Source of the DNA: Basidiobolus meristosporus CBS 931.73
Taxonomy: Eukaryota; Fungi; Basidiobolomycota
Length of the DNA stretch: 64,000 nt
Direction of reading: 5' to 3'
Assembly: GCA_002104905.1 (NCBI GenBank)
Contig: MCFE01000148.1
Coordinates: 62,001 to 126,000 of the forward strand
In this document: positions 8,900 through 64,000 of the stretch, one piece after another
Layout: every line of letters begins with the position of its first letter
Position numbering within the stretch: position 1 is the first letter of the stretch
Made by a program: the position numbers and the translations under genes
Notes under the pieces: model-generated
Database searches by the model: none
Told to the model about the DNA's origin: nothing
The model's input: the letters and a program-made list of their open reading frames with translations, nothing else

Positions 8900-9535
8900 A
8901 ATATATCTATTTCTGTCTGACAAGGATCTATTGATTCATTTGCTGACTAATGCTTCTGATTTGATAGATTATACTGATAAACTGATAGGCTAAACATATA
9001 ACTAATTGATTTGACTAAAAACTGATATAACTTAAACATTCAAGCAGTAGATCCTAACACAATAACTTAGCAGGCAAATGGTGCATGGTCTATAAACTGA
9101 ACCCATCTGCTGACAGTTCCATTTGTATAATTAGACAGCATTTTTCAAATAATTCATCAAACTGCTCAGTGACTCCAATTGTTCTAAGGTGATATGCCTG
9201 TTGCAATTTAAGAAGTGATTTGGTTATAAAGAACTTATCAAGAAATAGTGATAATAGTTGAACTGTTGTTTATTAGTAAAGAAGCTCAGTATTTATACCT
9301 TTGGAGATGTAATACAGCTGTAACACTAAGTAAGGAGGTTTATCAATATTCAGGAGCATTCTATAACAGTTTCAGGGTTGGTACATAATAGTTGGTAGTG
9401 GTGATAATATGAACCTGACTAGAGAGGAATAATCATAAGATCATAGATCTGAAGAAAGTGGCAAAGTTAGAGATGTAAATGAGTCCCACAGTGACCAAGA
9501 CTAGTCCAGATTTGTTAAGTAAACTTTTTTCTCAC

Positions 9536-10541
9536 ATGAAGCCAGATTTGTTAGTTCAAATACTGTGTGACAGCATTTGACAGAAAATTTATGATCATTC
9601 GGAAATTTTAATACACAACTTAATCAAAGCTTTAAACAAATCTCATAATGCTTTTATTAATGTGTATCATGCAAACTTCTCTCAAACACTCAGATGTGTT
9701 GCCAAATTAACAACCGGGAAAAATAAGGGACAACAATGTAAATATCAGGCAAAAGATCATAAACTTTGTGGACATCATTTACATCATCTTCATCAAACCG
9801 TTTTAGAAGACGACACTGCTTCTTGCACTAACAACAAACAAATATCTAAAACATTAGCTTTACCAAACAAATTATTTTTCAACAAGATACAACAAAAGTT
9901 TATGCTCAAGATGACAAGATTGTAACCAAAGAAAATTTGCCACAAGATGTTAAAGTTGCATCAGAAAAAACTCCAAAACAAAATACAAAAAAGGCTTTTG
10001 TTCAAGGTGTTAAAGTTGCTTCAGAAAAAACTCCAAAACAAAATACAAAAAAGACTTCTGTTCAAGATGTTAAAGTTGCATCAGATAATAAATCAAAAAC
10101 TAACATGTCAAACAATCAAAAGTCTGCTACACAAATCTTAAAGCAGCAACTACGTAATAATATTCCTTTTAACACCAGTTCTTTTAACACCAACCTTTTA
10201 ACCGACAAATCTTTTGATGAACAAATTTTAGGCAAAGAGTTTTTGGAAATGGATTCGTTAATAAACAAGAATTTGGCAAAGAAGTTTATGATAAAGATGC
10301 TACCAAGAAATTTGTTTATGAAGATGAGTTAAAAGCTGATCTTAAACAAGTTGTTGTAAAAGAAAATATATACGTTGCTACTCAAGATATGTTACCGGTT
10401 GACCATTTAGATATCATAACAAATGAGATTGGCGTATTAGTTGGGACTTCTAAAGGAGTTGTTCCGTTAGTTAAAGATTATATAATACCTTATATGTATA
10501 ATAGTTTGATAGATAAAGTAAAAAAGTATATGAAAGGTTAA
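9536..10541 (+). pseudogene. Virus-like hypothetical protein (~335 aa reconstructed) with C-x13-C-x9-C-x2-H motif and 20-aa repeats
   Basis: RCVAKLTTGKNKGQQCKYQAKDHKLCGHH. One in-frame TGA (9578) and two single-T losses in T runs rejoin ORFs 9662-9925, 9937-10332 and a C-terminal frame ending at TAA 10541. Confidence 0.6.
9946..10085 (+). repeat. Coding tandem repeat, 60-bp unit, ~2.3 copies
   Basis: Encodes DVKVASEKTPKQNTKK(AF/TS)VQ twice plus a partial third. Confidence 0.9.
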
Positions 10542-10657
10542 ACGTGTTAATAAGCTTTAATTTGTATATAATGTTGATGTTAATATTTGTAATAATGTAT
10601 ATTGTATTATTAATTTGTAAATTATTATTTTAACTTTTGAAAACTTTTTTTACAAAC

Positions 10658-10915
10658 TTAGTTTTTATATTGTAAATATAATCATTGGTTTGGATTAATA
10701 ACGTATTTAGTTCTTATACTGTAAATATAATTATTAGTCTGGGTTAATAGCATACTTAGTCCTTATATTGTAAACATAATTATTGGTCTGGATTAATAGC
10801 ATACTTAGTTCTTATATTGTAAATATAATTATTAGTCTGGATTAATAGCATATTTAGTTCCTATATTGTAAATATAATTATTAGTCTGGATTAATAGCAT
10901 ACTTAGTTCTTATAT
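10658..10915. repeat. Intergenic tandem array, 49-bp unit, ~5 copies
   Basis: Unit tggattaatagcatacttagttcttatattgtaaatataattattagtc starts at 10691, 10740, 10789, 10838 and 10887. Confidence 0.95.
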
Positions 10916-10984
10916 CTTTGATCCTTGTATTAAAAACTTTTATTAATATTTTCCCAACGTTTTAAAAAGTTTTTTTTCGGGTCT

Positions 10985-11500
10985 TTACATTGGCAAATAA
11001 AGCATTCCTGCCGATGTTACAATTCTGGGTTGTTTTCCATCATCACGTTCAACCATAATTATATCCCCAACCTTAAACCCATACCACTTGCAAATTATCT
11101 CCGTTGTTAATAATTTTGGTAAAGTATGTGGAAGAATGTGCGCTTGACTTAAAACTTTTAACTCTTCCTTAGTTGCCAATCTGTGAACAGGTACTAACGG
11201 ATTTGTTGTTGGGTCATCTAGAACCTCATCTAAAAAAAATATTTTATCGTAATAGTTTAGATCTAAGCTTAAATTAATTTTTTCGATGTTTTTTTGGTTC
11301 ATCGGTATACTCATAATAAGTAAAATAAAATGTTGGTCGGTACATTTGTTCAGGAATTGGAAAGTATCCAATAAATCTGTGTTAGTATTATAATAGATTT
11401 GTAAGATGTCACCATTTTTACTGTACGTTAAAGTAGATTCATCTTTTATATACCCTCTACAAAATAACATACTATCCAACATGTCATTGATATCTCTCAT
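10985..11500 (-). CDS. rpb5: RNA polymerase subunit Rpb5/RpoH-like, virus-like, 171 aa
   Basis: C-terminus LVPVHRLATKEEL...LPKL...ICKWYGFKVGDIIMVER matches the Rpb5 C-terminal domain pattern; ORF is open. Confidence 0.9.
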   Translation of the reverse strand: MRDINDMLDSMLFCRGYIKDESTLTYSKNGDILQIYYNTNTDLLDTFQFLNKCTDQHFILLIMSIPMNQKNIEKINLSLDLNYYDKIFFLDEVLDDPTTNPLVPVHRLATKEELKVLSQAHILPHTLPKLLTTEIICKWYGFKVGDIIMVERDDGKQPRIVTSAGMLYLPM

Positions 11501-11605
11501 TGCATATATCTTTAATACAAATAAACTTAAACTTTCTTTTGCATATATTTTTGGTACAAATAAACTTTCTTTTGCATATATTTTTTAAAAACATTCTTTT
11601 TATTA

Positions 11606-13489
11606 CTAACAATTCTTAAATATATCATCTATTATTCTAATCGTGCAATTATCTGTACCAATAGTGTTGTTGTATAGAATCTTTATATCTCCCATAAGTT
11701 TGCAAGCCCTTCTGTTAAGATATCCTGTAGATGCAGTACTAACACCCGTATTAACAATCCCTTCTCTGGCTGCCATCTGGTGAACAAAAAATTCATATGG
11801 ATTTAATCCTTTGACGTAAGAAGAATCTAAGTATCCAGTTTCTAATTGTTTATCAAGAGTTTCAGAATATTTGTATGGCAATTTGCATTTAACGGGTTCC
11901 CCATACATGTACTGTTGGCCCAACTTCTGACTTATTTGGGTTAAATTTAGGTCGTTCCCTTTTGCCCCTGACAATACCATACTTTTAAGACCCGTGCCGG
12001 GAGTTTTGCATTTGTCTGATATTGTAGATAATCCTTTCCAATGTAAGTATCTTATACAAATTTTTTGGAGATTTGACACAAACTCTACGCCTTGTTTATG
12101 AGACAGTTGTTTAAGAAGATTATTTATAACCAACTTTGTTACAACCTCGTTGTTATATATGTCTTTATTGCAATCTTTTGGTATCGCCAATCTAAATAAA
12201 TTTCTTCCAGTAAGGTGTATATCTTTTGCAAATGTGTCTTGTTTGCATAATAGAAAGCAGTCCATAAAAATATCAGGGGCAATTGGCTCATTGGTTAAAG
12301 TCATGAAATATGCTCCAGTAATAGTATCCTGGATGGGTGGAGGTGGTTTGATGTTTGTTACTTCCAGTAACAGGTTGAATTTGTGTTCTATGTTGGGAAC
12401 AACAAATATATTCATCTCGTCGCCGTCAAAATTGGCATTAAAAAATGGGGTTACAAGTGGGTTAATAGAAATAGTTTTTATGTCATCCTGTCAAATTTTA
12501 GCTTTAAATCCTAAAACAGAAGTTTTGGTAAGAGAAGGTTGGCGGTTTATAAGAACTTTGTCATCATCCAACAATAACTTCTCGTAAGTTTGGTTGACAA
12601 AGATTAAGTTTGGGTTGTCAATAGGAACTTTGTTGTTAGATATAAAAATAATTTTGTGGTTAGAAAAGGACTTTAAGTTATGCTTGTGAATACAAATAGG
12701 AATACGGATATTATCAGAAATATATTTTGGGATATAAATTGTGTTATAGTCAAGACATGGATCTCCGGTAATAACACTACAGGCAGATCTTTCTGTACGT
12801 TTTCCAAGCATAATGTCACGAAAAATGCCATTTTTTCCGGACAGAAATTTTGCCATACCTTCTGTACGTTTGGTGCCAACAATTTTTGAGTAAGCATGAT
12901 AAATGTTATGAACCTCACCTTTTTTGGCATAGTTGACTAATTGTGTATATTTGGTGGATAAATCTGACATATATTCAGGATCTTCAGGGGAGCAAGTTTG
13001 AATAGGGGGGATGAGAATGTATTTAATAATGTAATTGGTAATGTTGGATTTATCGTAAAGTTTAGAATTCTTTTCAAGAGCAGAACAAATTTTATCTAAG
13101 GATATTTTTATGCCGGATTCTTGAGAAGATTTGGAGGTAGGTTTGCGTAAAACTAACCCGTCTCTAGTGACAGAATAACTACAAAAAAGTTTTGCTTTAC
13201 ATTGTGGGCATTTAGTTTCATCATGATTGGTGACATTAATGCCGCATGAGCTACACATGTTGTTGAGTTTAAACTCTAAATCCTTTTTATACAATGGGTG
13301 ACATATGTAAGTGCCAATATTTAAGTATGCACAATGTCCTGTGCAGTGTTTGTTGCATTTGATGCAAATATCACCATGGGTGCGAGGACCAAATTTGGGG
13401 TCGTAGATATCCCAAGATTTGTTGAGACAGAAGTCAGCAAGTTTGGTAATTTGTTGGTCAGATAAAAGGTTAAGTTCCATAATGTGCAT
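11606..13489 (-). pseudogene. rpb1: RNA polymerase largest subunit (Rpb1/RpoA'-like) N-terminal half, 627 codons, one internal stop
   Basis: DPKFG..CIKC..CTGH clamp Zn, GIFRDIMLGKR, SVITGDP, INRQPSL, NANFDGDEMN (canonical NADFDGD), SGAKG, GLNPYEFF..AREG..TGYLNRR. ORFs 12491-13489 and 11606-12415 are in the same frame. Confidence 0.92.
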
Positions 13490-13530
13490 AGATGTGAGTG
13501 TTGGTAGGGACGTATTAAAAAATTATTCTA

Positions 13531-14412
13531 TTAGTTTGTAGATGCGTATCTAAAACAAACAAATTTGTCGCCAATCATGTATGCATTTTCATGTTCATGA
13601 ATACGTTCACACAATCCGCAATAGGTTGGTTTAATACGATTCAAGGTTACTAGGCCACTGTCAAGGATTTGTCTAACTTTAAAACCGGCAGGGATGGATG
13701 AAGGGGGAGTGTTTGAAGATGGTTTAGGTAAAGGAGGGTGGGAGATGAAATATTGGTGGAGTTGGGATTGGGGGATAGAGATGTGGCGCATAGTTTGTGT
13801 ATTAATATTACCCAATAAGCTATCAGGGAAAGATTTGGGATTAATTTGTTGGGTGCCGAATAAGTATTTCCATCTTTTTTGTTGCCATTTGGTGCTACCT
13901 TCAAGGCGGAAACCTTGAACCGATTTGCATACGCCAGTATCGACACATAGAGTCCAGGGAGAGTTTTGTGAGTATTGGATCAGGGAATTGGTAAAAATTT
14001 TGCAAGAGATGTTGTCAGAGAAATAGTGGGATGATACGATAAGATGGTATGATATTTTTTCTGATGAGGAGATGTTGTAAAACAAAATTTGTGGGGTGCC
14101 GTGACCCATAATGTGGAAAAAGTTTTGGACATCTTGGATGAGGATGTGGGGATCTGAGATGTCACCGTCTAGATCTAGTCTAAATTTTTGGGGGCCCGAT
14201 CCAATAATTTTGGCAAAGAGGCGTTGGGTTGGTTTGAGATTAAGGTACCAGTGTTGGAATGCGTTTAAATTGTCAAACCTGGAATACATGCGATTACCAC
14301 TATGTTGGATAACTATTCCACGATTGTCTATATAAGGTAATTTTTTGACGAATTTTTTTCCAAAAATGGTTTGGGACATATTGGAAAAATAGGGAGGGAC
14401 ATACGAACGCAA
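13531..14412 (-). CDS. Compact PrimPol-like archaeo-eukaryotic primase with C-terminal Zn finger
   Basis: AEP motif I FRLDLD, motif II KISYHL, motif III VDTGV..QGFRLEGSTK; C-terminal CGLCERIHEHENAY..FVC. True start may be the ATG of MSQTIF. Confidence 0.85.
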   Translation of the reverse strand: MRSYVPPYFSNMSQTIFGKKFVKKLPYIDNRGIVIQHSGNRMYSRFDNLNAFQHWYLNLKPTQRLFAKIIGSGPQKFRLDLDGDISDPHILIQDVQNFFHIMGHGTPQILFYNISSSEKISYHLIVSSHYFSDNISCKIFTNSLIQYSQNSPWTLCVDTGVCKSVQGFRLEGSTKWQQKRWKYLFGTQQINPKSFPDSLLGNINTQTMRHISIPQSQLHQYFISHPPLPKPSSNTPPSSIPAGFKVRQILDSGLVTLNRIKPTYCGLCERIHEHENAYMIGDKFVCFRYASTN

Positions 14413-14526
14413 ATATGGTATAAATACTTTTAAAATTTCCGAATTTAATCAAAAAGTGTGCTGGGTGATAAATGGTGTATGTTTTTGGGTTAAAATGGGT
14501 AGTATTTAATTGTACGTATATAGCGC

Positions 14527-14830
14527 ATATTTTTGTTCTAGTCAGCGGTTATAATACGTGTGTATATAATATGTATATATTTTTGTTCTAGTCAACGGTT
14601 ATAATACTTGTGTATATAATATGTATATATTTTTGTTCTAGTTAGCGGTTATAATACTTGTGTATATAATATGTATATATTCTTGTTCTAGTTAGCGGTT
14701 ATAATACTTGTGTATATAATATGTATATATTTTTGTTCTAGTTAGCGGTTATAATACTTGTGTATATAATATGTATATATTTTTGTTCTAGTTAGCGGTT
14801 ATAATACTTGTGTATATAATATGTATATAT
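14527..14830. repeat. Intergenic tandem array, 50-bp unit, 6 copies
   Basis: ttttgttcta recurs at 14531, 14581, 14631, 14681 (tcttgttcta), 14731 and 14781. Confidence 0.95.
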
Positions 14831-14940
14831 TTTTTTTAAAAGCGATGGTTTATGTTCAATATTAATAGTTTGCGTGAAAAGTTTTTTAAAGGCAATGGTT
14901 TGTGTTTGATAGTAATAGTTTGCGTGAAAACTTTTTTAAA
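14831..14940. repeat. Second 50-bp tandem unit, ~2.2 copies
   Basis: ttttttaaa..atggttt..taatagtttgcgtgaaaa at 14831 and 14881, partial at 14931. Confidence 0.85.
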
Positions 14941-17900
14941 CCAGTAGTTGAGATTAGGGTAATATAAAATAGTTTGTCAGCAAATGTTTAGGTGTTAGAT
15001 TATAAAAGAGTTTTGGTGGAGAAAGTTTGGGAGTCGGAAAGGTTTGGGTCGAGAGAGTTTGGGAGTAGAAAGATTAAATTTGGTGGCAACTGCCACTGCA
15101 ATATCAGTACTTGTAGACACCATCAAGTATATTAGGCAAACAACCATTGATTGATAGGAAAAGTTTTTGTCCATATTTGAGCCGTTTTCATCTATAACTG
15201 GCTGAGATTTGCTTAATTTCAGGTTATTGTCCATAAGGGTAGCTGCAGGTTTGCAATTTTCCATTTTGAAGCGTTTAAGAATGTCCCTGATGTACTTTGA
15301 CTGATTCAGCACAGTTTTCTGTGTAGATATGTCATATATGAACCCAATTCCAAGAGAATAGCTCAATTTTCCAAGATCTTTCATCTCAAACTTGGTAAAG
15401 ATACCTGATTTTGTCTGTTAAGGTGCCTCTTGGTCACTTGTATCTCTAATTAGGCTGTCCACACAAAGAACTGGATGATCACACTCTTTTTGAGCTGTTT
15501 AAGATATATACTTTGATTTGCAATGCTACAAGAGAACCCAATTTTCTTTAGATATGCATCAATCTTGTTATACAATGCTCTAGGGGCCAGCTTAAGCTCA
15601 TGCAACAATTTTTTAAACTTGCACACCTTATGGGGGTCTTTTGGGCTGTTAAACCCTTCTTGTTGCTCCATATATATTTCTTCTTGCAAATCCCCATTTA
15701 GAAAGACTGTTTTGACATCCATTTAGTGTAGATCCAGACTGTGTTCAGCCTTCAGGTCTAGAACTGTCCTAATGGAGTCAAACTTGGCAACTGGAGCAAA
15801 TGTTTCCCTAAAGTCTTGTCCCTGGATCTGGGAATAGCCTTTAGCAACCAATCTAGCCTTGTACTTATCAATGGGACCATTTGAGGTTATCTTGATCTTC
15901 TAGACCCATCTATATCCTATTGGCTTTCTCCCATTTGGTAAATCTACCAGTTCCCACGTTTTACCTTGAACAGTAATTGGTACTCCTCCTGCATGGCATG
16001 TTGCCACTTAGTAGCATCTGGACTTTGCATTGCCTGTTCCAAATTCTGAGGTTTGGCACATAAGGCAAGATAAGCTTCTTCATGATCATTGGATGTCTGC
16101 CACCTGCATCCAGGGGCATTTCTTTTTGTGGTAGATCTCCTAACTGGGATAATTTGTTCTGATCTGGAACTGTTAGAAGTATCTTCTGTATCTGGCTTGA
16201 TTTTGTACAAATCTTCTTCATTAGTGTTGATTGCATCATTGGGCAGCTGACCAATGATTTCTGTGGCTTTCTAATCTGAATCCTTCACAAATACAATGTC
16301 TGTGCTCTTGATCAGCTCCTGAATTTTGCCATCATACACTCTATACTGTTTAGCATATTCACAATACCCAAGAAAGATCCCTTTCCTACTCTTTGGTTCC
16401 AACTTTGAGCTTTGTCTGTCAGGGATGTGATTAAAACATCACTGCAAAAGATCTTGAGGTGCTGGAGATCCGGTTTTTTGCCTGTATATGCTTCAAAGGG
16501 TGAAGAATCATGTGGTGCTGCTGTTGGGCATCTGTTTCTGATGTATACTGCGGTAGCAACAGATTCTGCCAAAAACCTGTAGTCCATTCCCTTATCATGT
16601 GACATAGATCATACCATATCTACTATTGTTCTATTTGCACCTTCTGCTACTCCATTTTGCTGTGGAGTATGAGGAACTGCGGTCTGTTAAAGTATACCAA
16701 TAAACAAGCAGTATTTTGCAAACTCCTTTGAACAGTATTCTTCTCCATTGTCACTTTGTTGTACATTCAATTTACATCCAGTTTGAGTTTCTGCCATGTT
16801 CTTGAAGTGCTTAAATGTCTCTAAAGGTTCATTCTTTGTATTGAGGAAGTTCACCCATGTATATCTTTCTTTGTCATCAATCAATGTCATAAAGTATCTC
16901 TTGGCTCCAAAGGAAAGTGCTCTCACGGGGCGATATATGTCTGAGTGTATGATAGCCAATATTTTGGGGGTATTGATGCCTTCTGAGCTCTTGGGATATT
17001 GCCTAGCTTGTTTGTCATATGAACATCCCTTACAAATATTCAATTTAATTGGAATTGAGTATATGAGGCCCAAAACCAGCTGATTTTTCACCAATTGGAT
17101 CATTTTCTGTTCCCCAATGTGTCCTAGCCTCCTATGCCACGTTTCCCAGTTGGCTTCATCAGTTTCAGCAATGTTAACATACTCAGGTACAATGATTTTG
17201 CATTGCAACTTGGATATATTGTGATCTCTGATTCCCAAAGCTAATTTTTGTCCATTCTCACTCAATATTAAGTTGCTCATCTTAGTAAAAACAAACTTCA
17301 GTCCCTGAGCAGTTGCTTTACTGACTGACGGTAGGTTTTTAGGTATTCCAGGCACATAGGGTACGTCAGTGAGTCTTGCTGTTGTTGCCCCTGAGCTATT
17401 GCTCATATTTAGTTGTATAGACCCACTTGCGGTAGCTTCCAGAGCCAAGTTATCTCACAGATAAACCTTTCTTACAGGAATAGTCTTTAGGTTGCTGAAC
17501 CACTACCTTGTACCACAATTATGCTGTGAGGCTCCAGAGTCAATATACCATTCATTACCTTGGTTACTTGCACTCTCTTGTATGGTTACACATAACTGTT
17601 CATCAGTAGTTATATTGCTTGCCTGCTCTAGTTTCTGTTTTCTGTCTGCTTGTTTCTTCTTTCATTTTCCTGCCCAGTGTCCTGGCTTTTTACAATAGTT
17701 GCAGCAACCAGGTTTTCATTGTTTTGTTGCTTTCTCTTCTTTTCTTAGTGCCTTTCTGAACTGAATAAAGCATTATCTTTGACTTTCTCTGCTTGATCAT
17801 TACGTCTGAGTTCTTCATGGAGAAGTCTTCCCTTGACATAATTCAAAGTCAAGTAGTCTTCTCTCCTTTCAAAAGAAAGTATGAGTGGCTTGTACTTGTC

Positions 17901-20900
17901 TGGTAGGCTGTAAGGAAGACAGAGTGTCTTTTCTTCATCATATACACCAGCATTAATACTGCAAAGCTCTTCTGCAAGTGTCTCCATCTTGGTAATCAGT
18001 TCTAGCATGTCATCATCTGGCTTTGTCCTCATGTGGAACAACTTTTGTATTAAATAAAGATTGCTTGATACTGACTTTGCTCTAAAGATCTTCTCTAAGG
18101 ATTCTCATGCTGCTTTGGCAGTATTTAGGGCATGGATCTGTCCAATGAAGGAATCTTGCACATTGATATATATGGCATTAAAGGCCTTTCTCTCCTTCTC
18201 TTGAAACTTCTCCACTTCTTTTGCTGTTCCTTTGGGCTCAACTTCTTTACCTCTTACTATATTTCAAAGCTTTCTTTTCTCAAGGTGGATCTGCATCTTG
18301 ATTCTCCAAAGTCTGAAGTTCTTTCCATCAAACCTTCTCCTTTACAAGGAAGATGTTTGTGTTGCTCTGTTTGCTGGTCAAAGTCATTTTTAGAATAGAT
18401 TAAGGCAATTGGGGATCATAACCCGTTGCAATTTAAGAGGTAATCTGGATATAAGGAACATATCAAGAAGTAGTGATAATAGTTGAACTGTTGTTTATTA
18501 GTAAAGAAGCTCAGTATTTATACCTTTGTAGATGTAATACAGCTATAACACTAAGTAAGGAGGGTTTCTCAGTATTCAGAAGCATTCTATAACAGTTTCA
18601 GGGTTGGTACATAATAGTTGGTAGTGGTGATAATATGAACCTGACTAGAGAGGAATAATCATAAGATCATAGATCTGAAGAAAGTGGCAAAGTTAGAGAT
18701 GTAAATGAGTCCCACAGTGACCAAGACTAGTCCAGATTTGTTAAGTAAACTTTTAGCTGCGGAATGAAACCAAATAGTCCAATATTTCAACAATGCCAAG
18801 GTTTTACAGTGTTTGATCAGCTGCATTTTCTGGTAAGCTTCCAATGTCTTTGCCATAAAACTTGCATCTTTATCAGTCAGCTTCTCTACAGGTCATTCAA
18901 ACTTCATCAGGATCCCATTGAAGATGAATCTTGCAACTTCTTGCTCATTGGCCTCAGGTACATCTTTAGTAAGTGGTCATTTAATTGCATAGTCAATTTC
19001 CATTAGGACCCAATTGTTGCATTTCCTGGTGGTCAGTAGTCTTCCAATAAAGTAAATTCCCCATCTCCTAATGGCCTTACTAGATCCATGGGAAAGAGCT
19101 TTAAAACTGTCTGTGGTTGGCATTGGTTGATTTGAGAACTTGGACATGTCTTACCAGCTTTTCAATATCCCACTTCTTTCTAAGTCACCATGCCCAGGCT
19201 TTCATAAGGCTACCAGTTCCTTCAGTTTAAAAATGTTCATATCTATTGTGTAGATTATGTATTAAACCCAGGCAAGCAATATATGAACAAATGGCATTAT
19301 GGCTTCAATCAACAATTTTATAAAGTGTTTCATCCTGGACTACAAAGTTGCTGGTTTCTTCCCAGATCTTCTTCTTGATAGCTTTATCCATCTCATTAGA
19401 AATAGCTTTGTCCTTCAAGTATTTTAGTGAAAAGTTAGGCCAAGCTGATTCATGCCAATCACCTTCCAAGTAAATAAATTCTGATTGAGGCATGATCATT
19501 CTTTGCAGTGCACCTGACACCTTCAATGTAGTATCCACATGTTTTCAAATATTGTATTATGGCTAGTATCTCCTTCTCAAGCACTGGATAGGTTTGTTCT
19601 GCCATGTTCAGTCTCTTGGATTGCAAAGCAACTGGTCAGTCCTTTTCCTTATTTTCTTGGCTCATTACTCTACCAATTGCATAATCTGAAGCATTTGTGC
19701 ACAAAGTAAATTCTTTTCTGGAGTCAGGTATTCTTATGCTTGGCAGCTTAGCAAGTTTATTTGTGAGCATCTGAAAGGCAGTCTCACAGGCTATGTTGCA
19801 CTGGTAGGCCTTGACTTTTGTGAGACTACCAGTCAAAGGGGCTGCAATACATTTAAAGGACTTGACAAATTTCCAATTTCACAAACCCATTCCAAGAAAT
19901 GATCTGAGCTCTGAACTGCTGTAGGGCTGCTTCAAATTGTTGATAGCTTCCACTCTTTTTGGGTCAAAGGTCAATCCTGTGCTAATAAATATGTGTCCTG
20001 AATACTCAACAGGTCTCTTGTAGAACTCACACTTTGCTAGCTAGTGGTATAGCTTATTCTCTCTCAGCTACTTCAAGACCTTTCCCATGTGTACCAAGTG
20101 GTCCTTTGCTGTCCTGCTGTATATCAATATGTCATCTGAGTATAATACCACAGACTTGTCCACGTACTTATGAAAAATGGTTTGCATCAAAGGCCAAAAC
20201 CCATGATTAAGTACTTGTAATGTCAATATCTGGTCCTGAATGCTGTCTTAGAGGTGTCTTCTGGTTTCACACTAATCTGGTTATATCCAAACATGAGGTC
20301 ATTCTTGCTGAGTAATGTGGCTTCATTGAGTTGGTCCAGCAGCTTATCTATGTCAGGTATGGTGTATGTGCTCTTGACAATAACTGAGTTATGAGCTATG
20401 TAGTCATTACAAATTCTAAGAGTTCCATCCTTGCTATTTGCAAGATGGACATGTGCTCACTAGGTGACATCTGGGTTTGATGTGTCCTTGCTCCAATAAC
20501 TGTAGTAGTTGTCTCTTCAACTCTTATAACTCCAATGGACTCATTGTATAAGGTGGCTTTCTCACTCGAGGGCTATCTCCTGTGTCAATGGCATGATCCA
20601 CACTTTTGACAGATGGTAAACTTATGGCCCTTATTGCTTCCAATATCTTGACTCAACTTTGACACCACCCAGCAACAATCTATCCTACAGCCTTCCAATG
20701 CAGTGTGCACTTCCAAAGTAGATGTCAAAACCATTCAAGTCCCTGTAAAATGATTTCAGTATGGCATAAGTATCTGTGATGAGCTTTCATATGGATATTT
20801 AAGCATTACTTAATTATCTAGCTGGATAATGTACCTCAGTGAGTCAACAGTAAGGAAAGAATTGGGGTAGATAGCTTTGTCATTAGTTTTATCTCAAGAT

Positions 20901-26158: not shown

Positions 26159-29100
26159 GGTAGTAGCAGTAACCAGACACCTCCATTCAATAGAGGGAAG
26201 TAGCCTCCCTCAAGATATAAAAATAACAGGAATGGAAAAATACAATGTGGCAAATCTGTGCCTAATAGTATTAGATACTCCCAATTTTTAGCTAACAGCA
26301 ACAAAGAATGTCTAACATGGCCCAGGACCAGCCAATCCCTGTGAAGAGCATCTTCAGTGTGAAGGTTAACTGGAGCCATGGTAGTGTCAATGAAAACTTG
26401 GGAAATTGGCACTCTAAGATTGAAGAAGCTTTTAGGGCTAAAGGAATTGCCCAGAGAGCAAGTTATGTTGTGCAGCCTCTTACCAGGCAGATGAAGCTTT
26501 ACAGTTGTACCACAACAAGACTAGATCAACAGCTATAATTGGATGTTCTACTATCTCTACCTGAGATGAGTTTGTGTTTAGAGTATAAGATGGTCTGGAA
26601 CCTCCTCACTAGCAGACACCAATAAAGGAATATGAAGACCCTCAGACAGAAAGGAACTTTGCAAGAATACATTCATGGGTGTAGATATCTACTTTGACAA
26701 CTTATAAGAATTAACCCCAGTGATCAAGTTGAATACCTGCTTGATGGTTTGAAAGAAAGAACTTGTAAGGTGAACTATCAAAGACCTTACTCTATTGACA
26801 AAGCCATCATGAATACCATTGACTATGACTCAGCTACATTTGGAGCTGAAAGCCTATAATGACTAATCAGATAGGCTACAGTCACCATGAAAGAAGACAA
26901 CCAGAAGCTGTGCCATGGGAAATAGACACTTGGCCAAAGAGTCCCACCTTAGAAGAATATGAGAAATGACTTTGTTTTGACTGTTACCAGCAAGTGCATA
27001 TCTCAAAGTAATGCTCTCAGAGGAGAGATGAGCGTTGTTCAGCAAGAGCCTTTAACCACACTAAAGCTCTTGAACATAATAATTTGTAGGATGAACTTAA
27101 TGGAGACTCAGGACTTGCATTCCATATGGAAAGAAGATCCTTGTGTCAGATGACTTCAAGCTCAGGAAACCTATTATACCAGCACAGAGCAATAGATAGG
27201 GTACCTGCTATGATTGTGATTGACTCAGGAGCATCACATGAGTACATTTCAAAGCATTTTGCCCTAGAAGCTGGAATCAACTTGGAACTCACAAAAATAG
27301 CTCCAGTTTCAGCAGCTGATTGAAACTCACAGAATCAACCCAATTGCTCAGGCAATAAAAATCAGGATCAATGACTGGGAAGAAGATCTACAGGCATACA
27401 TGTTTAGCAGCTGTAGACTTGACCTTGTACTTGAAAAGACCTGTTATTTTGCTGTAATCCATCAATCAACTGGAGATCTCATGCTACTGAGATTCATAAG
27501 GACAACAAAACATATAAGCTACTACCAGACACTCTGGATTTCAGCTTGGTCATTTCCAGTTTGAGTGAGACAAGTGAGCTTAGCAAAGCACAGTACTGTA
27601 GGAAACCTGGGAAAGGTTCCCAAATGCTCTGCATTGTGATAGTACAGGGGAATTTCTCTACCACAGCTCCCCAGAAGGCCCAGACTCTTTTGAAGAAATA
27701 TTAAGACATGTTTCCAGATGAACTTGTAAGCCTACTACCAGTTGGTGATATGGATTGTACTATTCATCAATAATTGAAGTAGCCCCAATGCAAATCAGAA
27801 CTCAGATCTCAGATAAGAGCTTACTCTGAGCCCACATGTTTCAGATTGTGCCATTGGTGGAGTATTGAGCCAAGACAATGAGGGAAAGGACTGCCTAGTT
27901 GCCTTCATATCCATAAAACCAAGCTCAGCAAAACAAAACCATCTATTGCATGAGAAGGAGATGCTAGCCACAATTCACTGCTTGAAGTCATGGAGATGCT
28001 ACATTGAAGGGGTCACATGCTCTGTGAATTCTGATCACACCCCAATCAGGTATATACTTACTGAGAAGGTACTATCCAGAAGAATGTCAAGAAGTAGCAA
28101 ATACACTCAGTAATTTGACTTGAAAATTGGCACTGCCCTGGCAAAGACAACACTGTTGCTGATATCATATCAAGACTGGAACAAGTTGCACAACTCAACA
28201 TGGTGCATGAATCAGAATGGCCTTGCCTATTAACAGGGTATTTGGAGGACCAAGCTACTGCTAATGAGGTTAATGAGGATGTCAAGAAGCTAATACAGGA
28301 TGAAGCCAGCAAATTTTAGTACAGGATGAAACACTCAACCAAATTGTTGAAAGAACCTCAATAGCTTATTGCCCTTCTGTTGCTTGTCTAGATTTAATGC
28401 ATAAGCTACACAATGGATATGAACATCTTGAAATTGAAGGTACCTATAGCCTTGTGAAAACCAGATTGCAGCAAGTTATTGAGAAGCTGGTGAAAATGCA
28501 CCCAAGTAGCCAAAACAACCCAGGCATACCACACAGAAGTGCCAAACTCTTTCCCTTGGAGCCTGTAAGACCATATGAGAGATGGGAAATGACTTTGATA
28601 ACAGACTGCCAACCTTCATGAAATGCAACAGTTGGGTCCTAGTAGCGATTGACTATACAACTATATGACAAGTTGCTAAAGACATACCTGTGGCCAGTGA
28701 GCAAGAAGTTGGACAATTCATCTTCCATTAGTTCCTGATGAAGTGCGGATGCCCTGCAGAGAAGCTAGCTGATAAAGGTGCAAACTTGATGGTAGAGATA
28801 TTGAAAGCTTACTGGGATACGCAGCTGGTAAAACTCTTGAAAACCTTGCATATCACCCCAGGACTAATGGAGTCACCATGCAGATTAAAGGAGTATTTAG
28901 AAAAATGCTGACCAAGTAGTCAAATGGAGCTGTCAGTGGATGGGATGTGTATATTGACCAGGCACTATGTGCCTGCAGAGTTATAGTGCACAGCAACACC
29001 TAACAACTGTAGCAATTTAAGAAGTAATTTGGATATAGGGAACTTATCAAGAAATAGTGATAATAGTTGAACTTTTGTTTATTTGTAAAGAAGCTCAGTA

Positions 29101-30474
29101 TTTATACCTTTGTAGAAGTAACACAGCTGCAACACTAAGTAGGGAGGGTTTCTCAATATTCAGGAGCATTCTGTAACAGTTTCAGGGTTAGTACATCATG
29201 TTTAGCAAAAGTGCTAATTTGATCCTGAATATAGCGGAATAATCATAAGATTATATATCTGGAGAAAGTGGCAAAGTCAAGGCAGTAAATAAGTCCTACA
29301 GTGACTAAGACTAGTCTAGAATTGTTAAGTAAATCTTTAGCTGCTGAATGATACCAAATAGTCCAATATTTTAACACTCCCCCTCAACTAAATAATTTCT
29401 TTATCCCAATTTCTCTCTAAGGATCTCAAACTGTGGCCTAGCTAGTGGTTTTGTCAATATGTCTGCCACCATTTTGTCAGTTGGGCAGTAAACTAACTCC
29501 TCTAAGTTATTTTCTACTGCTTCACTCACAAAGTGATTCTGTATATCAATGTGCTTAGTTCTGGCATGATTAGTAGGATTTCTAGCTAATGAAATACAAC
29601 TTTGATTATCCTTGTATATACATGTTGGTTCACCTGAGCTAAAACCTAAGTCTTTGAATAAGTTTTGTAGCCGTATAGCCTCCGTGGTTGCTTGACATGC
29701 AGCCATATATTTGGCTTCAGTTGTAGATAGTAGACTTGTTCCATTGTACCGTGCCAGGGCATGCGGCGTGATCTGCGGTTGTAAAGAACAATCAGGCGCG
29801 ATATTATAGCTACCAGAAGGAAGGATTGTTCTTGGACAATTTTGCACTATGTGGGACAATCTCGCACACTATGGCACAGTCCGACACGATGAGGTTGGAA
29901 CGGATGATCACGCCAACTTGTAATGTTTGCATCACATGCGCAATCAGATACCGCCATTATGGTGGGTAAAATCCGGTATTTGGATATGTTTCTTTAATGT
30001 AAATGGAAATAGATTTGTATCACACTATAAACTAGACTAGTACTTACCATTTTGGTTACCCTCACTCCAATTGGACACTATCTCAGTGGTTAATTGGTCC
30101 AAAGGTATCCTGAAGCTGGCAGCCCCCAATTGGCTCATTGACTACTGAAAAACCTACCTGATTTGCCATCAAATATCCCATTTTGTTCATTGAGCAAGTA
30201 AATCCCTGATCCTAGTGATTGGACAAGGTGTCATAGCCAGCACTCAAGCAATTGTGTAGGTGCAAAACAGATCCAATAGCTGCACTGGTATTACAGATGA
30301 CATATATATATGCAGGGTGTTTATTTATAGGGGTTCTGTCTCAAATGTGAGATGACCTTGATATTACTTATATCAAAAATTTGATGATCACTGATTTGCA
30401 ATGGCTTGATTTGGATCGCAAAAAAAAAGGGTTGTCGGGATCATTACAAATGTGAGCAATTCAAAGCAATTGCA

Positions 30475-31707
30475 TCATCTTCTCCTGGGTTTTTTTCTCA
30501 CAGGGATTACTACTGAAGCATTTGGTAGTGACTCACTTTGCACACCTATACTACTTCCTGGCTGACTATCATCTTGGCTACTTCTGTATTTGTAGTCAGT
30601 ATTTTGCCTCCTAGTTGATGAGTGCAATGCTACAGCTTGGCCGCGCTGAATTGCTCCAACTGAACCAACTGAACCGGCCTGTAGTGCCATGCGCTGATGT
30701 GTTCTTTTACTTGCCAAGGGCTCCGGTGGTTGAGGCACTTCATGTTGGTCATCATCAGTCAGTTCACCAGAAGTAACTTGCTGATGGTCAGGCAAAACGG
30801 CACACGCAGGCGTGCCTTGATGCGTTGAGATGGCCCTTGGCTGAGTTCAATGTGATGCTGCAAGTTGACACGACTCGGTCTGCTCCAATGGACTTGTGTC
30901 TAAATGAGCAGTTTGGCAAGTTCTCGTAGTTTTGCTCTGAAGCGCACGCGTTGACTTGATGCGGGGCGTTCTGGTAAAGGGTGTTGGCGTGCTCTGGACT
31001 GACGTGCGCCGGCGCGCTGTGGTTGCAAGAGATGGTAGGGAATCCAGCAAGGTGTGCTGGCACAATCTGGATGATGTTGCTTGCGGTCTGTATTCTTCCT
31101 CCTGAAGCTCACCATCTGATTCCTCAAGGTATTCACTTACCCTCTGTCTGATACTTTGGAGCTGTTGCCTGGATGAGTCCTGTGTTTATTGCTCTCAGAA
31201 GCCACTTAGCTCTACTAATATATCATGTAGTACAGTAGTCATTTGAGGCAAAAACTCATTCAAAATCTCTTTGGTTCCCAAAGTTGAGGCATGAACAGAC
31301 GTGTTCCGCCCATACTGTGCAAATTGCGTGCGAAATTGCACCTGTGCGGCTTCTTTGTCAAATCCCCTCACTCTCAGCTCATTCTTGATTTCAATACTTG
31401 TCTTGTTATATATCTTTTTACATACATCGGCTGGCATCTTGATGTAGAACTCATGCCACAGCTTTCTACTCAAATTCTTCCATCTTTGTTGACTCTCTGA
31501 GGTATCTAGTTCTGCTAGATTAATCAGTAGTGCCCAAATATCTGTATGAAGGCTCATCATAGACACTTGGGCCATACTAAAATCATTTGGCAAGAACTCA
31601 AACAGATCCAACATTGACTTTTCCAGTCCGGACTGCGTTTGTGAGCTGGGGGATGGGTTTTGTCTGGGTTGTACTAAAGATGAGTTGAGGCTTGGTATGG
31701 GGACCAT
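30475..31707 (-). pseudogene. PHIS accessory protein, Myb/SANT(MADF)-like, ~410 codons with in-frame stops
   Basis: ORFs 31195-31707, 30847-31065 and 30475-30795 share one frame; DIWALL..ESQQRWKNL resembles the MADF W..RWKNL helices; basic C-terminus RKKPRRR. Confidence 0.6.
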
Positions 31708-32066
31708 AGCAATGGATTTGGATACTTATACAGCAGTATATTGGCATCAACCTGGTCTTATATGAAATATATATGAAAACTAATGTGATTGTTGAATTTT
31801 CCATATATTATGCATGATGCATCTTGGATTGAGTTGACACAGATCAGATCACATCAATTGCAGATTTCCTATTTGATTATAGACCTATGATTAAAGCATC
31901 AATAAAAGTACCAAGGCATTGTTTGCTGATGATTTTTGCATCATAATGATGGGATACATGGCAATTGATGGAGATTTAACCATAATGTATTAAAAATCAA
32001 ATAAATAAGGCAGATTGCGCCAAATCAATTCAAACCACCTTAATACAATCATCCACCATTTTTAAT

Positions 32067-32951
32067 ATGACTTACTCATCTGAATGGTCTTTTCTCATCA
32101 ATCCCATCACTACCACTGGATTTCCTTTTGACACACTAGAGGAGATCTATTCCAAGTACTGTGGACCATCAACCCCAATCTACTCAAGGAGATCCCTTGT
32201 CAAGCTTCTCTGATATTACAAGAAACATTGCCCTACAAGGTTTCATCCCACCATCCATGGCAACAAAAGTCCTAGAAGCTTTCATTCCCAGCTGACAGCA
32301 ATGGAGAACCACCTTGCAGAGGGTATGAATGACTTAGAGCAAGCTTGGTATACTAGGTTCAGAAGCTCCAATAGACTTCCGTATCCCAGAATGTTCAGCA
32401 ACAGGTTCCATATCAGGAGTATTTTGGATACCTTCCCAGTGAGGATTAACAGACCTTCTAGAGGGCAGAGGCACTTTTATTCTGGCAAGTACAAGGCACA
32501 CTGTGTGAAGTTTCAAGCACTGTCTGACATTGAGGGTAACATCATCTGGTTTAGTGGGCCATTTGCTGGAAGTAGGCATGACAAAGCACTCTGGGTAGAG
32601 AATCATCCTGAATTCAGTAGAGGGGAGAAATGTATGGCAGACTTGGCTTATATAGGAGAGGATTGTCAGAGATTAGGATGTATTAAAGCTTATAGGAAGC
32701 CAAGGAATGGTGTACTTAGCAGGAAGCAGAAGCTCTACAATGAGATATTTAATCATTTCAGAGTAAGGGTAGAGCACACATTTGGATATCTGAAGAGATT
32801 CAGCATATTGGCAGGTAAATACAGAGGAAAGTCATATAAAGGAGAAAACAGCAGAATAGGTAAAATAGTTAAGATACTTATTGATGCACAGTATGTTCAT
32901 ACAAGAAGACATCCACTGAGAGAAATGTGTCTGGAGCATTATGAGAAGTAA
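32067..32951 (+). pseudogene. DDE transposase (DDE_Tnp_4 / IS5-like), ~294 codons, stop at codon 49
   Basis: LDTFP, YSGKYKAHCVKFQ, GSRHD, ADLAYIG, YN..RVRVEHTFGYLKRFSIL; TGA at 32211. Confidence 0.9.
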
Positions 32952-35900: not shown

Positions 35901-37849
35901 ACTGTTCATCAGTAGTAATATGGTTTGCCTGCTCTAGTTTCTGTTTTTTGTCTGCTTGTTTCTTCTTGCATTCTCTTGCCTAGTGTCCTGGCTTTTTACA
36001 GTAGTTACAGCAGCCATGTTTTCTTTGGTTTTGTTGCTTTCCCTTCTTTTCTGTGTGCCTTTCAGAACTGAATAAAGCATTATCTTCAATTTTCTCTGCT
36101 TGATCATTACGTCTGAGTTCTTGATGGAGAAGTCTTCCTTTGACATAGTCTAAAGTCAAGTTGTCTTCTCTGCTTTCAAAAGAAAGTATGAGTGGCTCAT
36201 ACTTGTCTGGTAGGCTGCAAGGCAGACAGAGTATCTTTTCTTCATCATCTACACCAGCATTAATACTGTAAAGTTCTTCTGCAAGTGTCTCCATTCTGGT
36301 ACTGAGTTGTAGCATGTCATCATCTGGTTTCTTCCTCATGTTGAGGAACTTCTGTTTCAAATAAAGCTTGCTTGATACTGACTTTGCTCTAAAGATCTTC
36401 TCTAAGGATTCCCATGCTGCTTTGGCAATATTTGAGGCATGGATTTGTCCAATGAAGGAGTCTTGCACATTGATGCATATGGCATTGAAGGCCTTTCTAT
36501 CCTTCTCTTGAAACTTCCCCACATCTTCTGCTGTTCCTTTGGGCTCAACTTCCTTTCCTGTTACTATGTTCCAAAGCTTTCTTTCCTAAAGGTGGATCTG
36601 CATCTTGATTCTCCAAAGTCTGTAGTTTGTCCCATCAGACCTCTCCTTTACATGGAAGATGTTGGTATTTCTTTGTTTGCTGGTAGAAGTCACTTTTAGA
36701 ATAGATTAAGGCAATTGGGGCTCATAACCTGTTGCAATTCAAGAAAAAATTTGGATATAGAGAACTTATCAAGAAATAGTGATAATAGTTGAACTGTTGT
36801 TTATTCATAAAGAAGCTCAGTATCCATACCTTTGTAGAAGTAATACAGCTGTAACACTAAGTAGGGAGGGTTTATCAATATTCAGGAGCATTCTGTAACA
36901 GTTTCAGGGTTAGTACATAATGTTTGGTAATAGTGCTAATTTGATCCTGACTATAGGGAATAATCATAAGATCATATATCTGGAGAAAGTGGCAAAGTTA
37001 AGGCAGTAGATGAGTCCTACAGTGACTAAGACTAGTCTAGAATTGTTAAGTAAATCTTTAGCTGCTGAATGATACCAAATAGTCCAATATTTCAACAACA
37101 ACTGCCATTTTACTTAGTGTATGGATGTACACCAAGTATCCCAGGAGATCTAACACTACCAATGCTTCCCTATGTTTTGGATGATGAATTTGGTCATCCT
37201 AGTATATACAGGCAACTATAATAAAGATGTCAAGAGGGATGGGTCAAGGTACCCAAAATTGCAGAAAAGTTGAAGAAGTGATCAGAACCCTCTCAGCTAT
37301 AGTAGTGAAAAACATGATGATTGACTGCTTGGATATTTAAGTTAGATAAGTTTTAGTCATATCAATTGGCTTTATGATTGGCCTATCCACATATCAGTAT
37401 TATCTAACAAATAAGTGAAATTAGTCAGCAGATGAATCCGCAGATCCTTAGCTGACAGATATATAGCTTTAAAATAGGATCTTATAGAGTAAAGACAATG
37501 CAATCATATGAGTTGTCAGTCACAACGCATATTAGGGAATACATTTACTCAGCCATTGATCTGACAAAAAGTATATAATGCTGGAATAACTAGGAGTCCA
37601 CCAGATTATCAATATATTATGAACTAGCACTTGTTTGAATGATGTAATTCAGTATATTAACTTATATATTAGTTTGTAGATATTTGCTAATTGTTAAGAT
37701 ATGGTGAAGTACAGAATCTCAGGAAAATCTGATAGTTGCCCAAATATGCTGAAACTTGGCATATGTAGTCCTGAGGTCCCCTAACAATGAACATTTGGTT
37801 ACATATATGTAGTTTTTCATTAAGTACCAATACTGGGTTGCAACTTAAT

Positions 37850-60715: not shown

Positions 60716-60814
60716 TAGCAAGCGCCGCCTTTTTGTAGCAGTCCGTGGGTAGAATCGATATTCTTGGTGACTGACCCAAGCCTACCCTTGCTCCACCCTT
60801 CTTCACACGTCTAT

Positions 60815-63810: not shown

Positions 63811-64000
63811 TGAGAACATCCGGATTAATTGACCAACACCCACCCTTGACTATGAAGACTTGGACTGGCTTTCTTCTAGAGGAGACTAAATGAGCTCTGG
63901 GGAAACAGAAACAACCTTAAGAACCAGCTTACTCTGACATCAACGACTCGGACTTCCCTGTTGTAGTACCTTTTTATCAAGTCTTCATGGTCCACAGCAG

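What the first reader, a model, noticed from the sequence alone, without database searches (positions are those of the whole stretch)
9199..18792. Giant-virus-like transcription/replication gene block captured inside a single Copia retrotransposon
Seen: both outer ends of the Copia carry the same 5-bp TSD (ATGCC) and rejoin a Gypsy integrase, so this is one insertion. Against sibling C1-b, ~645 bp (RT end, RNase H, PPT, first ~39 bp of the 3' LTR) is replaced by ~5.56 kb of AT-rich, intronless DNA (junctions ~9528/9529 and 15086/15087) encoding PrimPol, Rpb1-N, Rpb5 and a Zn-motif protein. Known: multisubunit RNAP plus AEP primase in compact intronless clusters is typical of Nucleocytoviricota. 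Inference: viral DNA was patched into a break in an already integrated Copia, recording recent infection of this host by a possibly undescribed large DNA virus.
Basis: partly seen in the sequence, partly recalled or inferred. Interest (0 to 1): 0.92.

Follow-up and report, generated by a model that had tools for sequence, protein, structure and literature searches.

The report
Giant-virus gene fragment inside a fungal Copia
A decayed 5.6-kb piece of a pithovirus-like giant virus (primase plus two RNA polymerase subunit genes) sits inside an old Copia retrotransposon of a Basidiobolus fungus; it is a clear example of a kind of viral fossil already reported for this genus in 2020.

Summary
A minus-strand Copia (9197-18792) has a 5-bp target duplication (ATGCC) and lies in a Gypsy integrase. 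Its RT end, RNase H, PPT and the first ~38 bp of its 3' LTR (~645 bp by the sibling copy) are replaced by 5,558 bp of AT-rich DNA (9529-15086). This DNA encodes a stand-alone primase of the archaeo-eukaryotic (AEP) type, an Rpb1 N-part, Rpb5 and a Cys/His-motif gene, plus 49- and 50-bp tandem arrays.

The genes are viral, not host. Their closest relatives lie in compact virus-like contigs with PolB, capping enzyme, D6/D11 helicase, Rpb2, UDG and a separate Rpb1 C-part. The primase model best matches Pithovirus, Cedratvirus and Orpheovirus primases. The ~620-aa Rpb1-N is this lineage's natural split gene, not a truncation.

The 5' LTR is intact, the 3' LTR is cut and the PPT is lost, so the DNA entered after Copia integration. 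A 12-nt LTR copy just past the left junction suggests end-joining with templated filler.

"Recent" and "undescribed" are not supported. The LTRs differ by 4.2% and Rpb1 is broken. Gong et al. 2020 described endogenous pithovirus-like elements with split RPB1, RPB5 and RPB2 in Basidiobolus. The window is NCBI contig MCFE01000148.1. This is a new member of a known kind, of moderate interest.

The parts
9192..9196 (.). Target-site duplication ATGCC, left copy
   Evidence: the same 5 bases flank both outer LTR ends; the flanks rejoin in other Gypsy copies
9197..9528 (-). 3' LTR of the Copia, lacking its first ~38 bp in element orientation
   Evidence: 95.8% identical to 18422-18754; homology to its own 5' LTR and to the sibling LTR stops at 9528
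9529..15086 (.). Foreign virus-derived segment, 5,558 bp, GC 0.318
   Evidence: no homology to the sibling Copia; the only stretch of the window with matches to proteins of virus-like contigs
9529..9560 (.). Junction filler: holds a second copy of the 12-mer CCAGATTTGTTA (9542-9553), which otherwise occurs only in this element's two LTRs
   Evidence: 3 matches in the window against 0.01 expected
9597..9611 (+). 15-nt motif ATTCGGAAATTTTAA, 51 nt upstream of the plus-strand ORF start; candidate viral promoter element
   Evidence: an exact inverted copy at 14430-14444 has the same spacing to the primase ATG
9662..10541 (+). Broken plus-strand gene region: a Cys/His-motif segment, a Lys-rich segment with three 20-aa repeats, and a C-terminal segment, open in three different frames
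   Evidence: the Cys/His motif is 58% identical over 31 aa, with the same ligand spacing, to a RING protein next to Rpb2 in a giant-virus MAG contig (L018); no Pfam family
10604..10964 (.). 49-bp tandem array (about 5-7 copies) between convergent genes
10985..11500 (-). Rpb5-like RNA polymerase subunit, 171 aa, intact
   Evidence: PF01191 E=5.9e-10; cellular Rpb5 chains; 34-42% identity to Rpb5 genes of L004 and L012/L013
11606..13489 (-). Rpb1 N-part gene (split-type largest RNAP subunit), broken: one in-frame stop, and 2 of 3 catalytic aspartates
13531..14379 (-). Stand-alone AEP primase (PrimPol / NCLDV D5-primase clade), 282 aa, intact, with a C-terminal Cys/His zinc motif
14430..14444 (-). 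Second copy of the 15-nt motif, 51 nt upstream of the primase ATG
14477..14940 (.). Two adjoining 50-bp tandem arrays (about 6-7 and 2 copies) upstream of the primase
15005..15073 (.). Short 15/32-bp GTTTGGGAG-type repeats abutting the right junction; unique in the window
15087..18421 (-). Copia internal region (gag to pre-integrase/rve to RVT_2), with the polyprotein in at least 7 ORF pieces; RNase H and PPT missing
18422..18792 (-). Full-length 5' LTR of the Copia
18793..18797 (.). Target-site duplication ATGCC, right copy
29007..37098 (-). Sibling Copia used as comparator; it carries a nested DDE_Tnp_4 DNA transposon at 29731-33135

Best explanation
The block is an endogenous, decaying fragment of a pithovirus-like member of the Nucleocytoviricota. 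It belongs to the lineage published as 'fundsalphavirus' endogenous elements of fungi. It lies inside an older Copia of a Basidiobolus genome. Order of events: (1) shown: a Copia inserted into a Gypsy integrase with a 5-bp duplication. (2) Inferred: a double-strand break, or two, in the integrated Copia removed ~645 bp, and linear viral DNA present in the nucleus was joined in by end-joining. A short stretch copied from the nearby LTR at the left junction points to templated, microhomology-type filler synthesis. (3) Shown: the captured genes then began to decay. The piece carries a primase, the N-part of a split Rpb1, Rpb5 and a Cys/His-motif gene, with their own AT-rich intergenic tandem arrays and a shared upstream motif. 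It lacks Rpb2, the Rpb1 C-part, PolB and any capsid gene, so it cannot make a polymerase or a virus. It is a record of infection, not a working system.
For: Viral origin. The primase and Rpb1-N are 41-42% identical to adjacent genes of a 19.8-kb contig with capping enzyme, SNF2 helicase, classical PolB, Rpb2, DUF5757 and an Rpb1 C-part (L011). They are 29-37% identical to genes in soil metagenome, IMG/VR and NCBI contigs with Rpb5, UDG, Rpb2 and split Rpb1. Primase relatives occur in four giant-virus MAG contigs. The primase model (pLDDT 61) has Pithovirus LCPAC, cedratvirus, orpheovirus and P. sibericum primases as best BFVD matches, E 1e-13 to 1e-11. In the PDB it best matches human PrimPol, poxvirus D5/E5 and ASFV PrimPol.

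Not host Pol I-III. The best relatives score 156-227 bits, against 80 bits for fungal Pol II. In an NJ tree of the 150 best hits the window protein sits in the clade that holds 26 of the 27 proteins ending at the split point, away from the CTD-bearing Pol II sequences.

Post-integration DNA event. There is one TSD around the whole chimera. The 5' LTR is full while the 3' LTR is cut, and the PPT is lost. The 12-mer LTR copy occurs past the junction.

Decay. Rpb1 has one in-frame stop and 2 of 3 catalytic Asp, against 3 of 3 in seven relatives. The plus-strand gene is split over three frames.

Divergence from copies in B. ranarum and a Logan run accrued under purifying selection: dN/dS 0.06-0.14 at dS 0.9-2. 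This fits separate captures from replicating viruses.

Published precedent in the same genus: PMC7017919.
Against: No reads could be checked, so the two junctions rest on the assembly alone. No named giant-virus Rpb1 or Rpb5 sequences were available for a proper phylogeny; the lineage call rests on a medium-confidence primase model, on gene neighbourhoods and on the published trees. No capsid or packaging gene was seen in about 120 kb of related contigs. A 2026 survey found no giant-virus capsid genes in non-zoosporic fungi other than Dimargaris (PMC13533422). The virion nature of the source is therefore inferred, not shown. The end-joining mechanism rests on one 12-nt duplication.
Confidence: 0.8

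Rival explanations
1. The 5.6-kb piece is the remnant of a much larger integrated giant-virus genome that entered the Copia and was later trimmed by deletions.
For: In B. ranarum a capping-enzyme fragment lies directly upstream of the primase, where the window has tandem arrays. Relatives carry many more genes around the same primase-Rpb1N pair. Published giant endogenous viral elements are often eroded.
Against: No other viral gene occurs in the 64-kb window. Both junctions lie inside one Copia, with only ~645 bp of it lost. The left junction looks like a primary repair joint.
Confidence: 0.12
2. Retrotransposon-mediated capture: viral RNA was picked up by template switching, and the chimera was then spread by retrotransposition.
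For: The primase, Rpb1 and Rpb5 genes have the same orientation as the Copia. Gong et al. suggested that retrotransposons may help such elements to integrate and spread.
Against: A retrotransposed copy would have two identical LTRs at birth and would need a PPT. Here the 5' LTR is full, the 3' LTR lacks ~38 bp and the PPT is gone. The insert holds convergent genes, upstream regions and tandem arrays, so it is not an mRNA. No second copy is in the window.
Confidence: 0.03
3. Assembly chimera or contamination: reads of a free virus, or of another organism, were joined into a host contig.
For: Related copies in other data sets sit on short 2-3.5 kb contigs. Reads could not be inspected.
Against: Both joints fall inside one Copia in matching orientation, within a 154-kb contig. 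The viral genes carry disabling changes. The left joint contains a copy of the neighbouring LTR sequence.
Confidence: 0.04
4. The source was not a virion-forming giant virus but a capsid-less, plasmid-like cytoplasmic element, related to giant viruses in the way yeast killer plasmids are.
For: PolB, capping enzyme, SNF2 helicase and RNAP form the core of the related contigs. No capsid or packaging ATPase family was hit in any fetched relative. No capsid genes were reported in Basidiobolus.
Against: The PolB is of the classical PF00136/PF03104 type. Separate Rpb2, a split Rpb1, Rpb5, an AEP primase and UDG are present. Contigs reach 35-37 kb without terminal repeats. The primase best matches Pithoviridae, a family that I recall as lacking a typical capsid gene. 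Only parts of the related contigs were fetched.
Confidence: 0.08

Closest known systems
Endogenous 'fundsalphavirus' NCLDV-like elements of fungi (Gong, Zhang & Han 2020, Virus Evolution, PMC7017919)
   Same: Same host genus (Basidiobolus meristosporus and B. heterosporus are listed). Same gene families: RPB1 split into N and C parts, RPB5 and RPB2. Same pithovirus affinity, the same signs of decay, and retrotransposons nearby.
   Different: Those elements were found with PolB as probe, and this locus has no PolB. The stand-alone primase, the tandem arrays, the upstream motif and the exact nesting in a Copia with resolved junctions are not described there. Whether this locus is among their 87 sequences could not be checked, because the supplement is not held.
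Pithoviridae, Cedratvirus and Orpheovirus (amoeba-infecting giant viruses)
   Same: Their stand-alone DNA primases are the best structural matches of the window primase. They have AT-rich genomes with their own multisubunit RNAP. From memory, Pithovirus sibericum has abundant non-coding tandem repeat arrays.
   Different: Only about 20% sequence identity. Those genomes are hundreds of kilobases and their known hosts are amoebae. Whether their Rpb1 is split the same way was not established here (one search found nothing).
Giant endogenous viral elements and NCLDV insertions in algae, Euglena, Physcomitrium and Rhizophagus
   Same: Giant-virus DNA integrated in a host chromosome, eroded and interleaved with transposons (abstracts; for the moss).
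   Different: Those are tens of kilobases to 1.5 Mb. This is a 5.6-kb fragment wholly inside one retrotransposon.
Eukaryotic PrimPol and poxvirus D5/E5 and ASFV primase domains
   Same: AEP fold and its three catalytic motifs, plus a downstream Cys/His zinc motif.
   Different: Sequence-profile E-values are only 0.02-0.08, and no helicase domain is fused. It groups with viral stand-alone primases rather than with cellular PrimPol.
Yeast cytoplasmic linear killer plasmids (pGKL2 type), from memory
   Same: Fungal hosts; own capping enzyme, helicase and RNAP related to those of giant viruses.
   Different: As I recall, those use a protein-primed PolB, a fused compact RNAP and no Rpb5. The relatives here have a classical PolB and separate Rpb1N, Rpb1C, Rpb2 and Rpb5.

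Membership tests
Endogenous Nucleocytoviricota-derived element | Encodes hallmark giant-virus genes (multisubunit RNAP subunits, AEP primase) | tested here: met
   Pfam Rpb1 domains 2-5 and Rpb5_C; AEP motifs and fold
Endogenous Nucleocytoviricota-derived element | The genes group with viral rather than host homologues | tested here: met
   The best relatives are split Rpb1-N genes in virus-like contigs (156-227 bits, against 80 bits for Pol II). The NJ clade holds 26 of 27 split-type proteins. There are giant-virus MAG and Pithoviridae primase matches. A phylogeny with named viruses was not possible; published trees are in PMC7017919.
Endogenous Nucleocytoviricota-derived element | Capsid, A32 ATPase or PolB present in the same element | tested here: not met
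   None in the window. PolB occurs only in the relative L011. No capsid family was hit in the fetched relatives.
Endogenous Nucleocytoviricota-derived element | Physically joined to host DNA, with signs of decay | tested here: met
   Both sides are one Copia inside a Gypsy on a 154-kb contig. Rpb1 and the plus-strand gene are broken. Read support is not testable here.
'Fundsalphavirus' lineage (Gong et al. 2020) | RPB1 split into N and C parts, together with RPB5 and RPB2, in Basidiobolus and other early-diverging fungi | tested here: met
   Relatives' Rpb1-N proteins end within a few residues of the window protein's end. Separate Rpb1 C-part genes occur in L002 and L011. A B. ranarum homologue is 73-74% identical.
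'Fundsalphavirus' lineage (Gong et al. 2020) | PolB clusters with the published clade near Pithovirus | not testable with these tools
   No PolB in the window, and the paper's sequences are not held.
Ty1/Copia LTR retrotransposon | Two LTRs with TG..CA ends, a 5-bp target duplication, and integrase placed before RT (RVT_2) | tested here: met
Ty1/Copia LTR retrotransposon | Intact RNase H, PPT and both LTRs (competence to transpose) | tested here: not met
   About 645 bp including RNase H, the PPT and the 3' LTR start are replaced. The polyprotein is fragmented.
PrimPol sensu stricto (cellular) | Significant sequence match to PrimPol and closer to cellular than to viral AEPs | tested here: not met
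   No Pfam hit. Profile E=0.02 to human PrimPol. Viral stand-alone primases match far better by fold, 1e-13 against 1.8e-5.

The most novel reading that the evidence does not exclude
Basidiobolus species may be hosts of a still-circulating, diversified pithovirus-like virus lineage. The copies in this genome, two diverged copies in B. ranarum and one in a Logan run differ by dS of about 1-2 at dN/dS of about 0.1. A 19.8-kb related contig has only intact, tightly packed genes. A 15-nt upstream motif is still shared by two genes of the window copy. If so, the window records one of several independent captures, and a DNA virus of a non-zoosporic, gut-dwelling fungus awaits direct detection.
Probability: 0.3. 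Interest if true: 0.7.

Novelty: new member of a known kind. Interest (0 to 1): 0.4.

Why it matters
This locus gives base-level resolution of how giant-virus DNA enters a fungal chromosome. The viral DNA fills a break inside an already resident retrotransposon, and the joint carries a copy of nearby sequence. The locus adds a stand-alone primase, intergenic tandem arrays and a candidate promoter motif to the little that is known of the pithovirus-like lineage of early-diverging fungi. The low dN/dS between copies of different Basidiobolus genomes argues that the source viruses were replicating while they diverged. It does not reveal a new kind of element. The viral lineage, the host genus and the link with retrotransposons were reported in 2020.

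Tried and rejected
- The first AlphaFold model of the primase, from 4 sequences, had pLDDT 42.6 and was not used.
- PHROGs gave nothing useful.
- The word-based protein search with the Rpb1 N piece returned only the window protein and the B. ranarum protein.
- An exact look-up of the Rpb5 product found no record.
- Searches of IMG/VR for the 49- and 50-bp repeat units found nothing.
- Text searches for the accessions JASSUI/GCA_031963415 and MCFE01/GCA_002104905 found nothing usable. The organism behind the 37-kb contig L002 therefore stays unknown, and the species name of the window's assembly rests on my memory.
- The IMG/VR hit of the C-terminal plus-strand segment (L017) is a chance word match inside a ribonucleotide reductase and was discarded.
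- A first translation of that segment used the wrong frame and was redone.
- The plus-strand segments have no relatives among the fetched loci.
- No terminal inverted repeats were found in the insert or in L011.
- No tRNA or Rfam family lies in 9000-19000.
- Rejected: truncation of Rpb1 by the insertion event, because the split is natural.
- Rejected: a host Pol I-III origin.
- Rejected: retro-mobilisation of the chimera, because of the LTR asymmetry.
Full report
**1. What is there**

The window is a transposon-rich stretch at about 40% GC.
- A direct repeat pair, 9197-9528 and 18422-18792, is 95.8% identical over 333 bp.
- It starts TG and ends CA, and is flanked by ATGCC on both outer sides.
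- The sequences just outside are contiguous in three other Gypsy copies of the window. They correspond to the rve core of the integrase ORF 6901-7881.
- Between the LTRs, on the minus strand, lie gag-pre-integrase/rve and RVT_2 remnants in Copia order. The polyprotein is in at least seven ORF pieces.

**2. The replacement**

- Homology to a sibling Copia (29007-37098, 89% identity) runs from 18793 down to 15087 and stops there.
- Homology of the left LTR to the element's own right LTR and to the sibling's LTR stops at 9528.
- The sibling has its own nested DDE_Tnp_4 transposon (29731-33135, 26-bp TIRs). Taking its two Copia pieces apart gives about 607 bp of internal sequence.
- In its place are 5,558 bp (9529-15086) at GC 0.318.

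**3. Gene content of the foreign segment**

On the minus strand:
- A 282-aa protein with the three AEP primase motifs and a C-terminal Cys/His motif. It is conserved in nine relatives.
- An Rpb1 gene with Pfam domains 2, 3, 4 and the start of 5.
- A 171-aa Rpb5 (PF01191, E=5.9e-10).

On the plus strand, converging on these, is a region with three open segments in three frames. The first has a Cys/His motif. That motif recurs at 58% identity over 31 residues, with identical ligand spacing, at the end of a RING protein next to Rpb2 in a giant-virus MAG contig (L018).

Non-coding features:
- A 49-bp array lies between the convergent genes, and two 50-bp arrays lie upstream of the primase.
- A 15-nt motif, ATTCGGAAATTTTAA, occurs exactly twice in the window. 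Each copy lies 51 nt upstream of a start, that of the primase and that of the first plus-strand ORF. I read it as a candidate promoter element.
- No tRNA or Rfam family is present.

**4. Where the genes come from**

- The window is contig MCFE01000148.1 of NCBI assembly GCA_002104905.1. From memory this is Basidiobolus meristosporus CBS 931.73.
- The nearest named protein is from B. ranarum, at 73-74% identity.
- B. ranarum has two diverged copies, 87% identical to each other (L001 and L016). One of them has a capping-enzyme fragment upstream of the primase.
- A Logan run has a copy with a primase 80% identical in protein sequence (L003).

More distant relatives sit in compact, virus-like contigs:

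| Locus | Source | Gene content |
|---|---|---|
| L011 | 19.8-kb Logan contig | capping enzyme, SNF2 helicase, classical PolB, primase, Rpb1-N, Rpb2, DUF5757, Rpb1 C-part |
| L012/L013 | soil metagenome | Rpb2, DUF5757, helicase, capping enzyme, Rpb5, Rpb1-N |
| L002, L004, L005, L015 | NCBI, IMG/VR, Logan | Rpb1-N followed by the primase; UDG after it in L002, L004 and L015; a separate Rpb1 C-part and Rpb2 in L002 |

- The primase also has relatives in four giant-virus MAG contigs.
- A full HMMER scan with the C-terminal Rpb1 piece gave 4,256 hits. The best are 540-670-aa proteins that end where the window protein ends. The short Rpb1 is therefore the natural N-part of a split gene.
- In an NJ tree of the 150 best hits, the window protein sits in the clade that holds 26 of the 27 split-type proteins, not with CTD-bearing Pol II.
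- The best PDB match is Pol II at 80 bits. The family's own members score 156-227 bits.

The primase:
- A profile of the primase family hits human PrimPol (E=0.02) and poxvirus D5 (E=0.08), with all motifs aligned.
- A medium-confidence model (pLDDT 61) finds Pithovirus LCPAC, cedratvirus, orpheovirus and P. sibericum primases first in BFVD, at E 1e-13 to 1e-11.
- In the PDB the same model finds PrimPol, D5/E5 and ASFV PrimPol.

**5. It is already known in kind**

Gong, Zhang and Han (2020, PMC7017919) screened 1,006 fungal genomes.
- They reported endogenous NCLDV-like 'fundsalphavirus' elements in 14 species, including B. meristosporus and B. heterosporus.
- These carry D5, D6/D11 helicase, a SAM methyltransferase, RPB2, RPB5 and RPB1 split into N and C parts.
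- The PolB lies close to Pithovirus sibericum.
- Retrotransposon sequences lie beside some elements.

My results agree with that picture. Whether this locus, which lacks PolB (their probe), is in their list could not be checked.

**6. How it got there**

A retrotransposed chimera would have two identical LTRs and would need a PPT. Here the 5' LTR is full, the 3' LTR is cut and the PPT is gone. The foreign DNA therefore entered after integration, at the DNA level.

The 12-mer CCAGATTTGTTA occurs only in this element's two LTRs and once more 14 bp past the left junction, where 0.01 matches are expected. Such local copies are typical of templated filler in microhomology-type end joining; this is an inference. 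Short unique GTTTGGGAG-type repeats abut the right junction and remain unexplained.

No other viral gene lies in the window.

**7. Age and state**

- The LTRs differ by 4.2%.
- Rpb1 has one in-frame stop and keeps two of the three catalytic aspartates. Seven relatives keep all three.
- The plus-strand region needs at least two frame changes if it was one gene.
- The primase and Rpb5 are intact.
- Between the window copy and the copies in L003 and L001, dN/dS is 0.06-0.14 at dS 0.9-2. Most divergence therefore arose in functional, presumably replicating, genomes.
- The integration is younger than the Copia but not demonstrably recent.

**8. Limits**

- No reads were available, and no named giant-virus RNAP sequences for a tree.
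- No capsid gene was seen in the relatives I fetched.
- A 2026 survey found none in non-zoosporic fungi apart from Dimargaris.
- A capsid-less relative of giant viruses therefore cannot be excluded, though the Pithoviridae affinity offers a simpler reading.

**9. Note on conduct**

The ORF references I had to use in tool calls, and my reading, implicitly bound the break, and in my working thoughts I registered its place and kind. Neither the place nor the change is given in the notes or in this report, and nothing was deleted.

Noticed in passing
window 29731-33135: A Harbinger/PIF-type DNA transposon (DDE_Tnp_4 ORF at 32301-32951, 26-bp terminal inverted repeats) is nested in the RNase H region of the sibling Copia. 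This is the same part of the element that the virus fragment replaces in the other copy.
   Followed up: partly
window 9597-9611 and 14430-14444: An exact 15-nt inverted pair, ATTCGGAAATTTTAA, lies 51 nt upstream of a gene start in both cases. It is a candidate promoter motif of the source virus. Upstream regions of the primase in L001 and L003 share only a looser CTTTTGAAT-like element.
   Followed up: partly
window 15005-15073: GC-richer 15/32-bp repeats with a GTTTGGGAG core directly abut the right junction and are unique in the window. Whether they are filler, viral or other in origin is unknown.
   Followed up: partly
L002 (JASSUI010000003.1 of GCA_031963415.1), L004, L005, L015: A second, GC-richer subgroup of relatives shares the order Rpb1-N then primase (UDG follows in L002, L004 and L015), plus large B_lectin-domain proteins in L002 and L004, on contigs of 17-37 kb. 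The organism behind GCA_031963415.1 could not be identified.
   Followed up: partly
L011, L012/L013, L004: A 720-780-aa protein with Pfam DUF5757 is conserved next to the polymerase genes in three related contigs. Its role is unknown.
   Followed up: no
L001 and L016 (B. ranarum GCA_040143965.1): Two copies of the Rpb1-N gene, 87% identical to each other, sit on separate short contigs of one assembly. That genome therefore holds several diverged copies or variants.
   Followed up: partly
window 58000-64000: GC rises to 0.48-0.51 at the right end of the window. There are no long ORFs, so this is probably intron-bearing host genes outside the transposon field.
   Followed up: no
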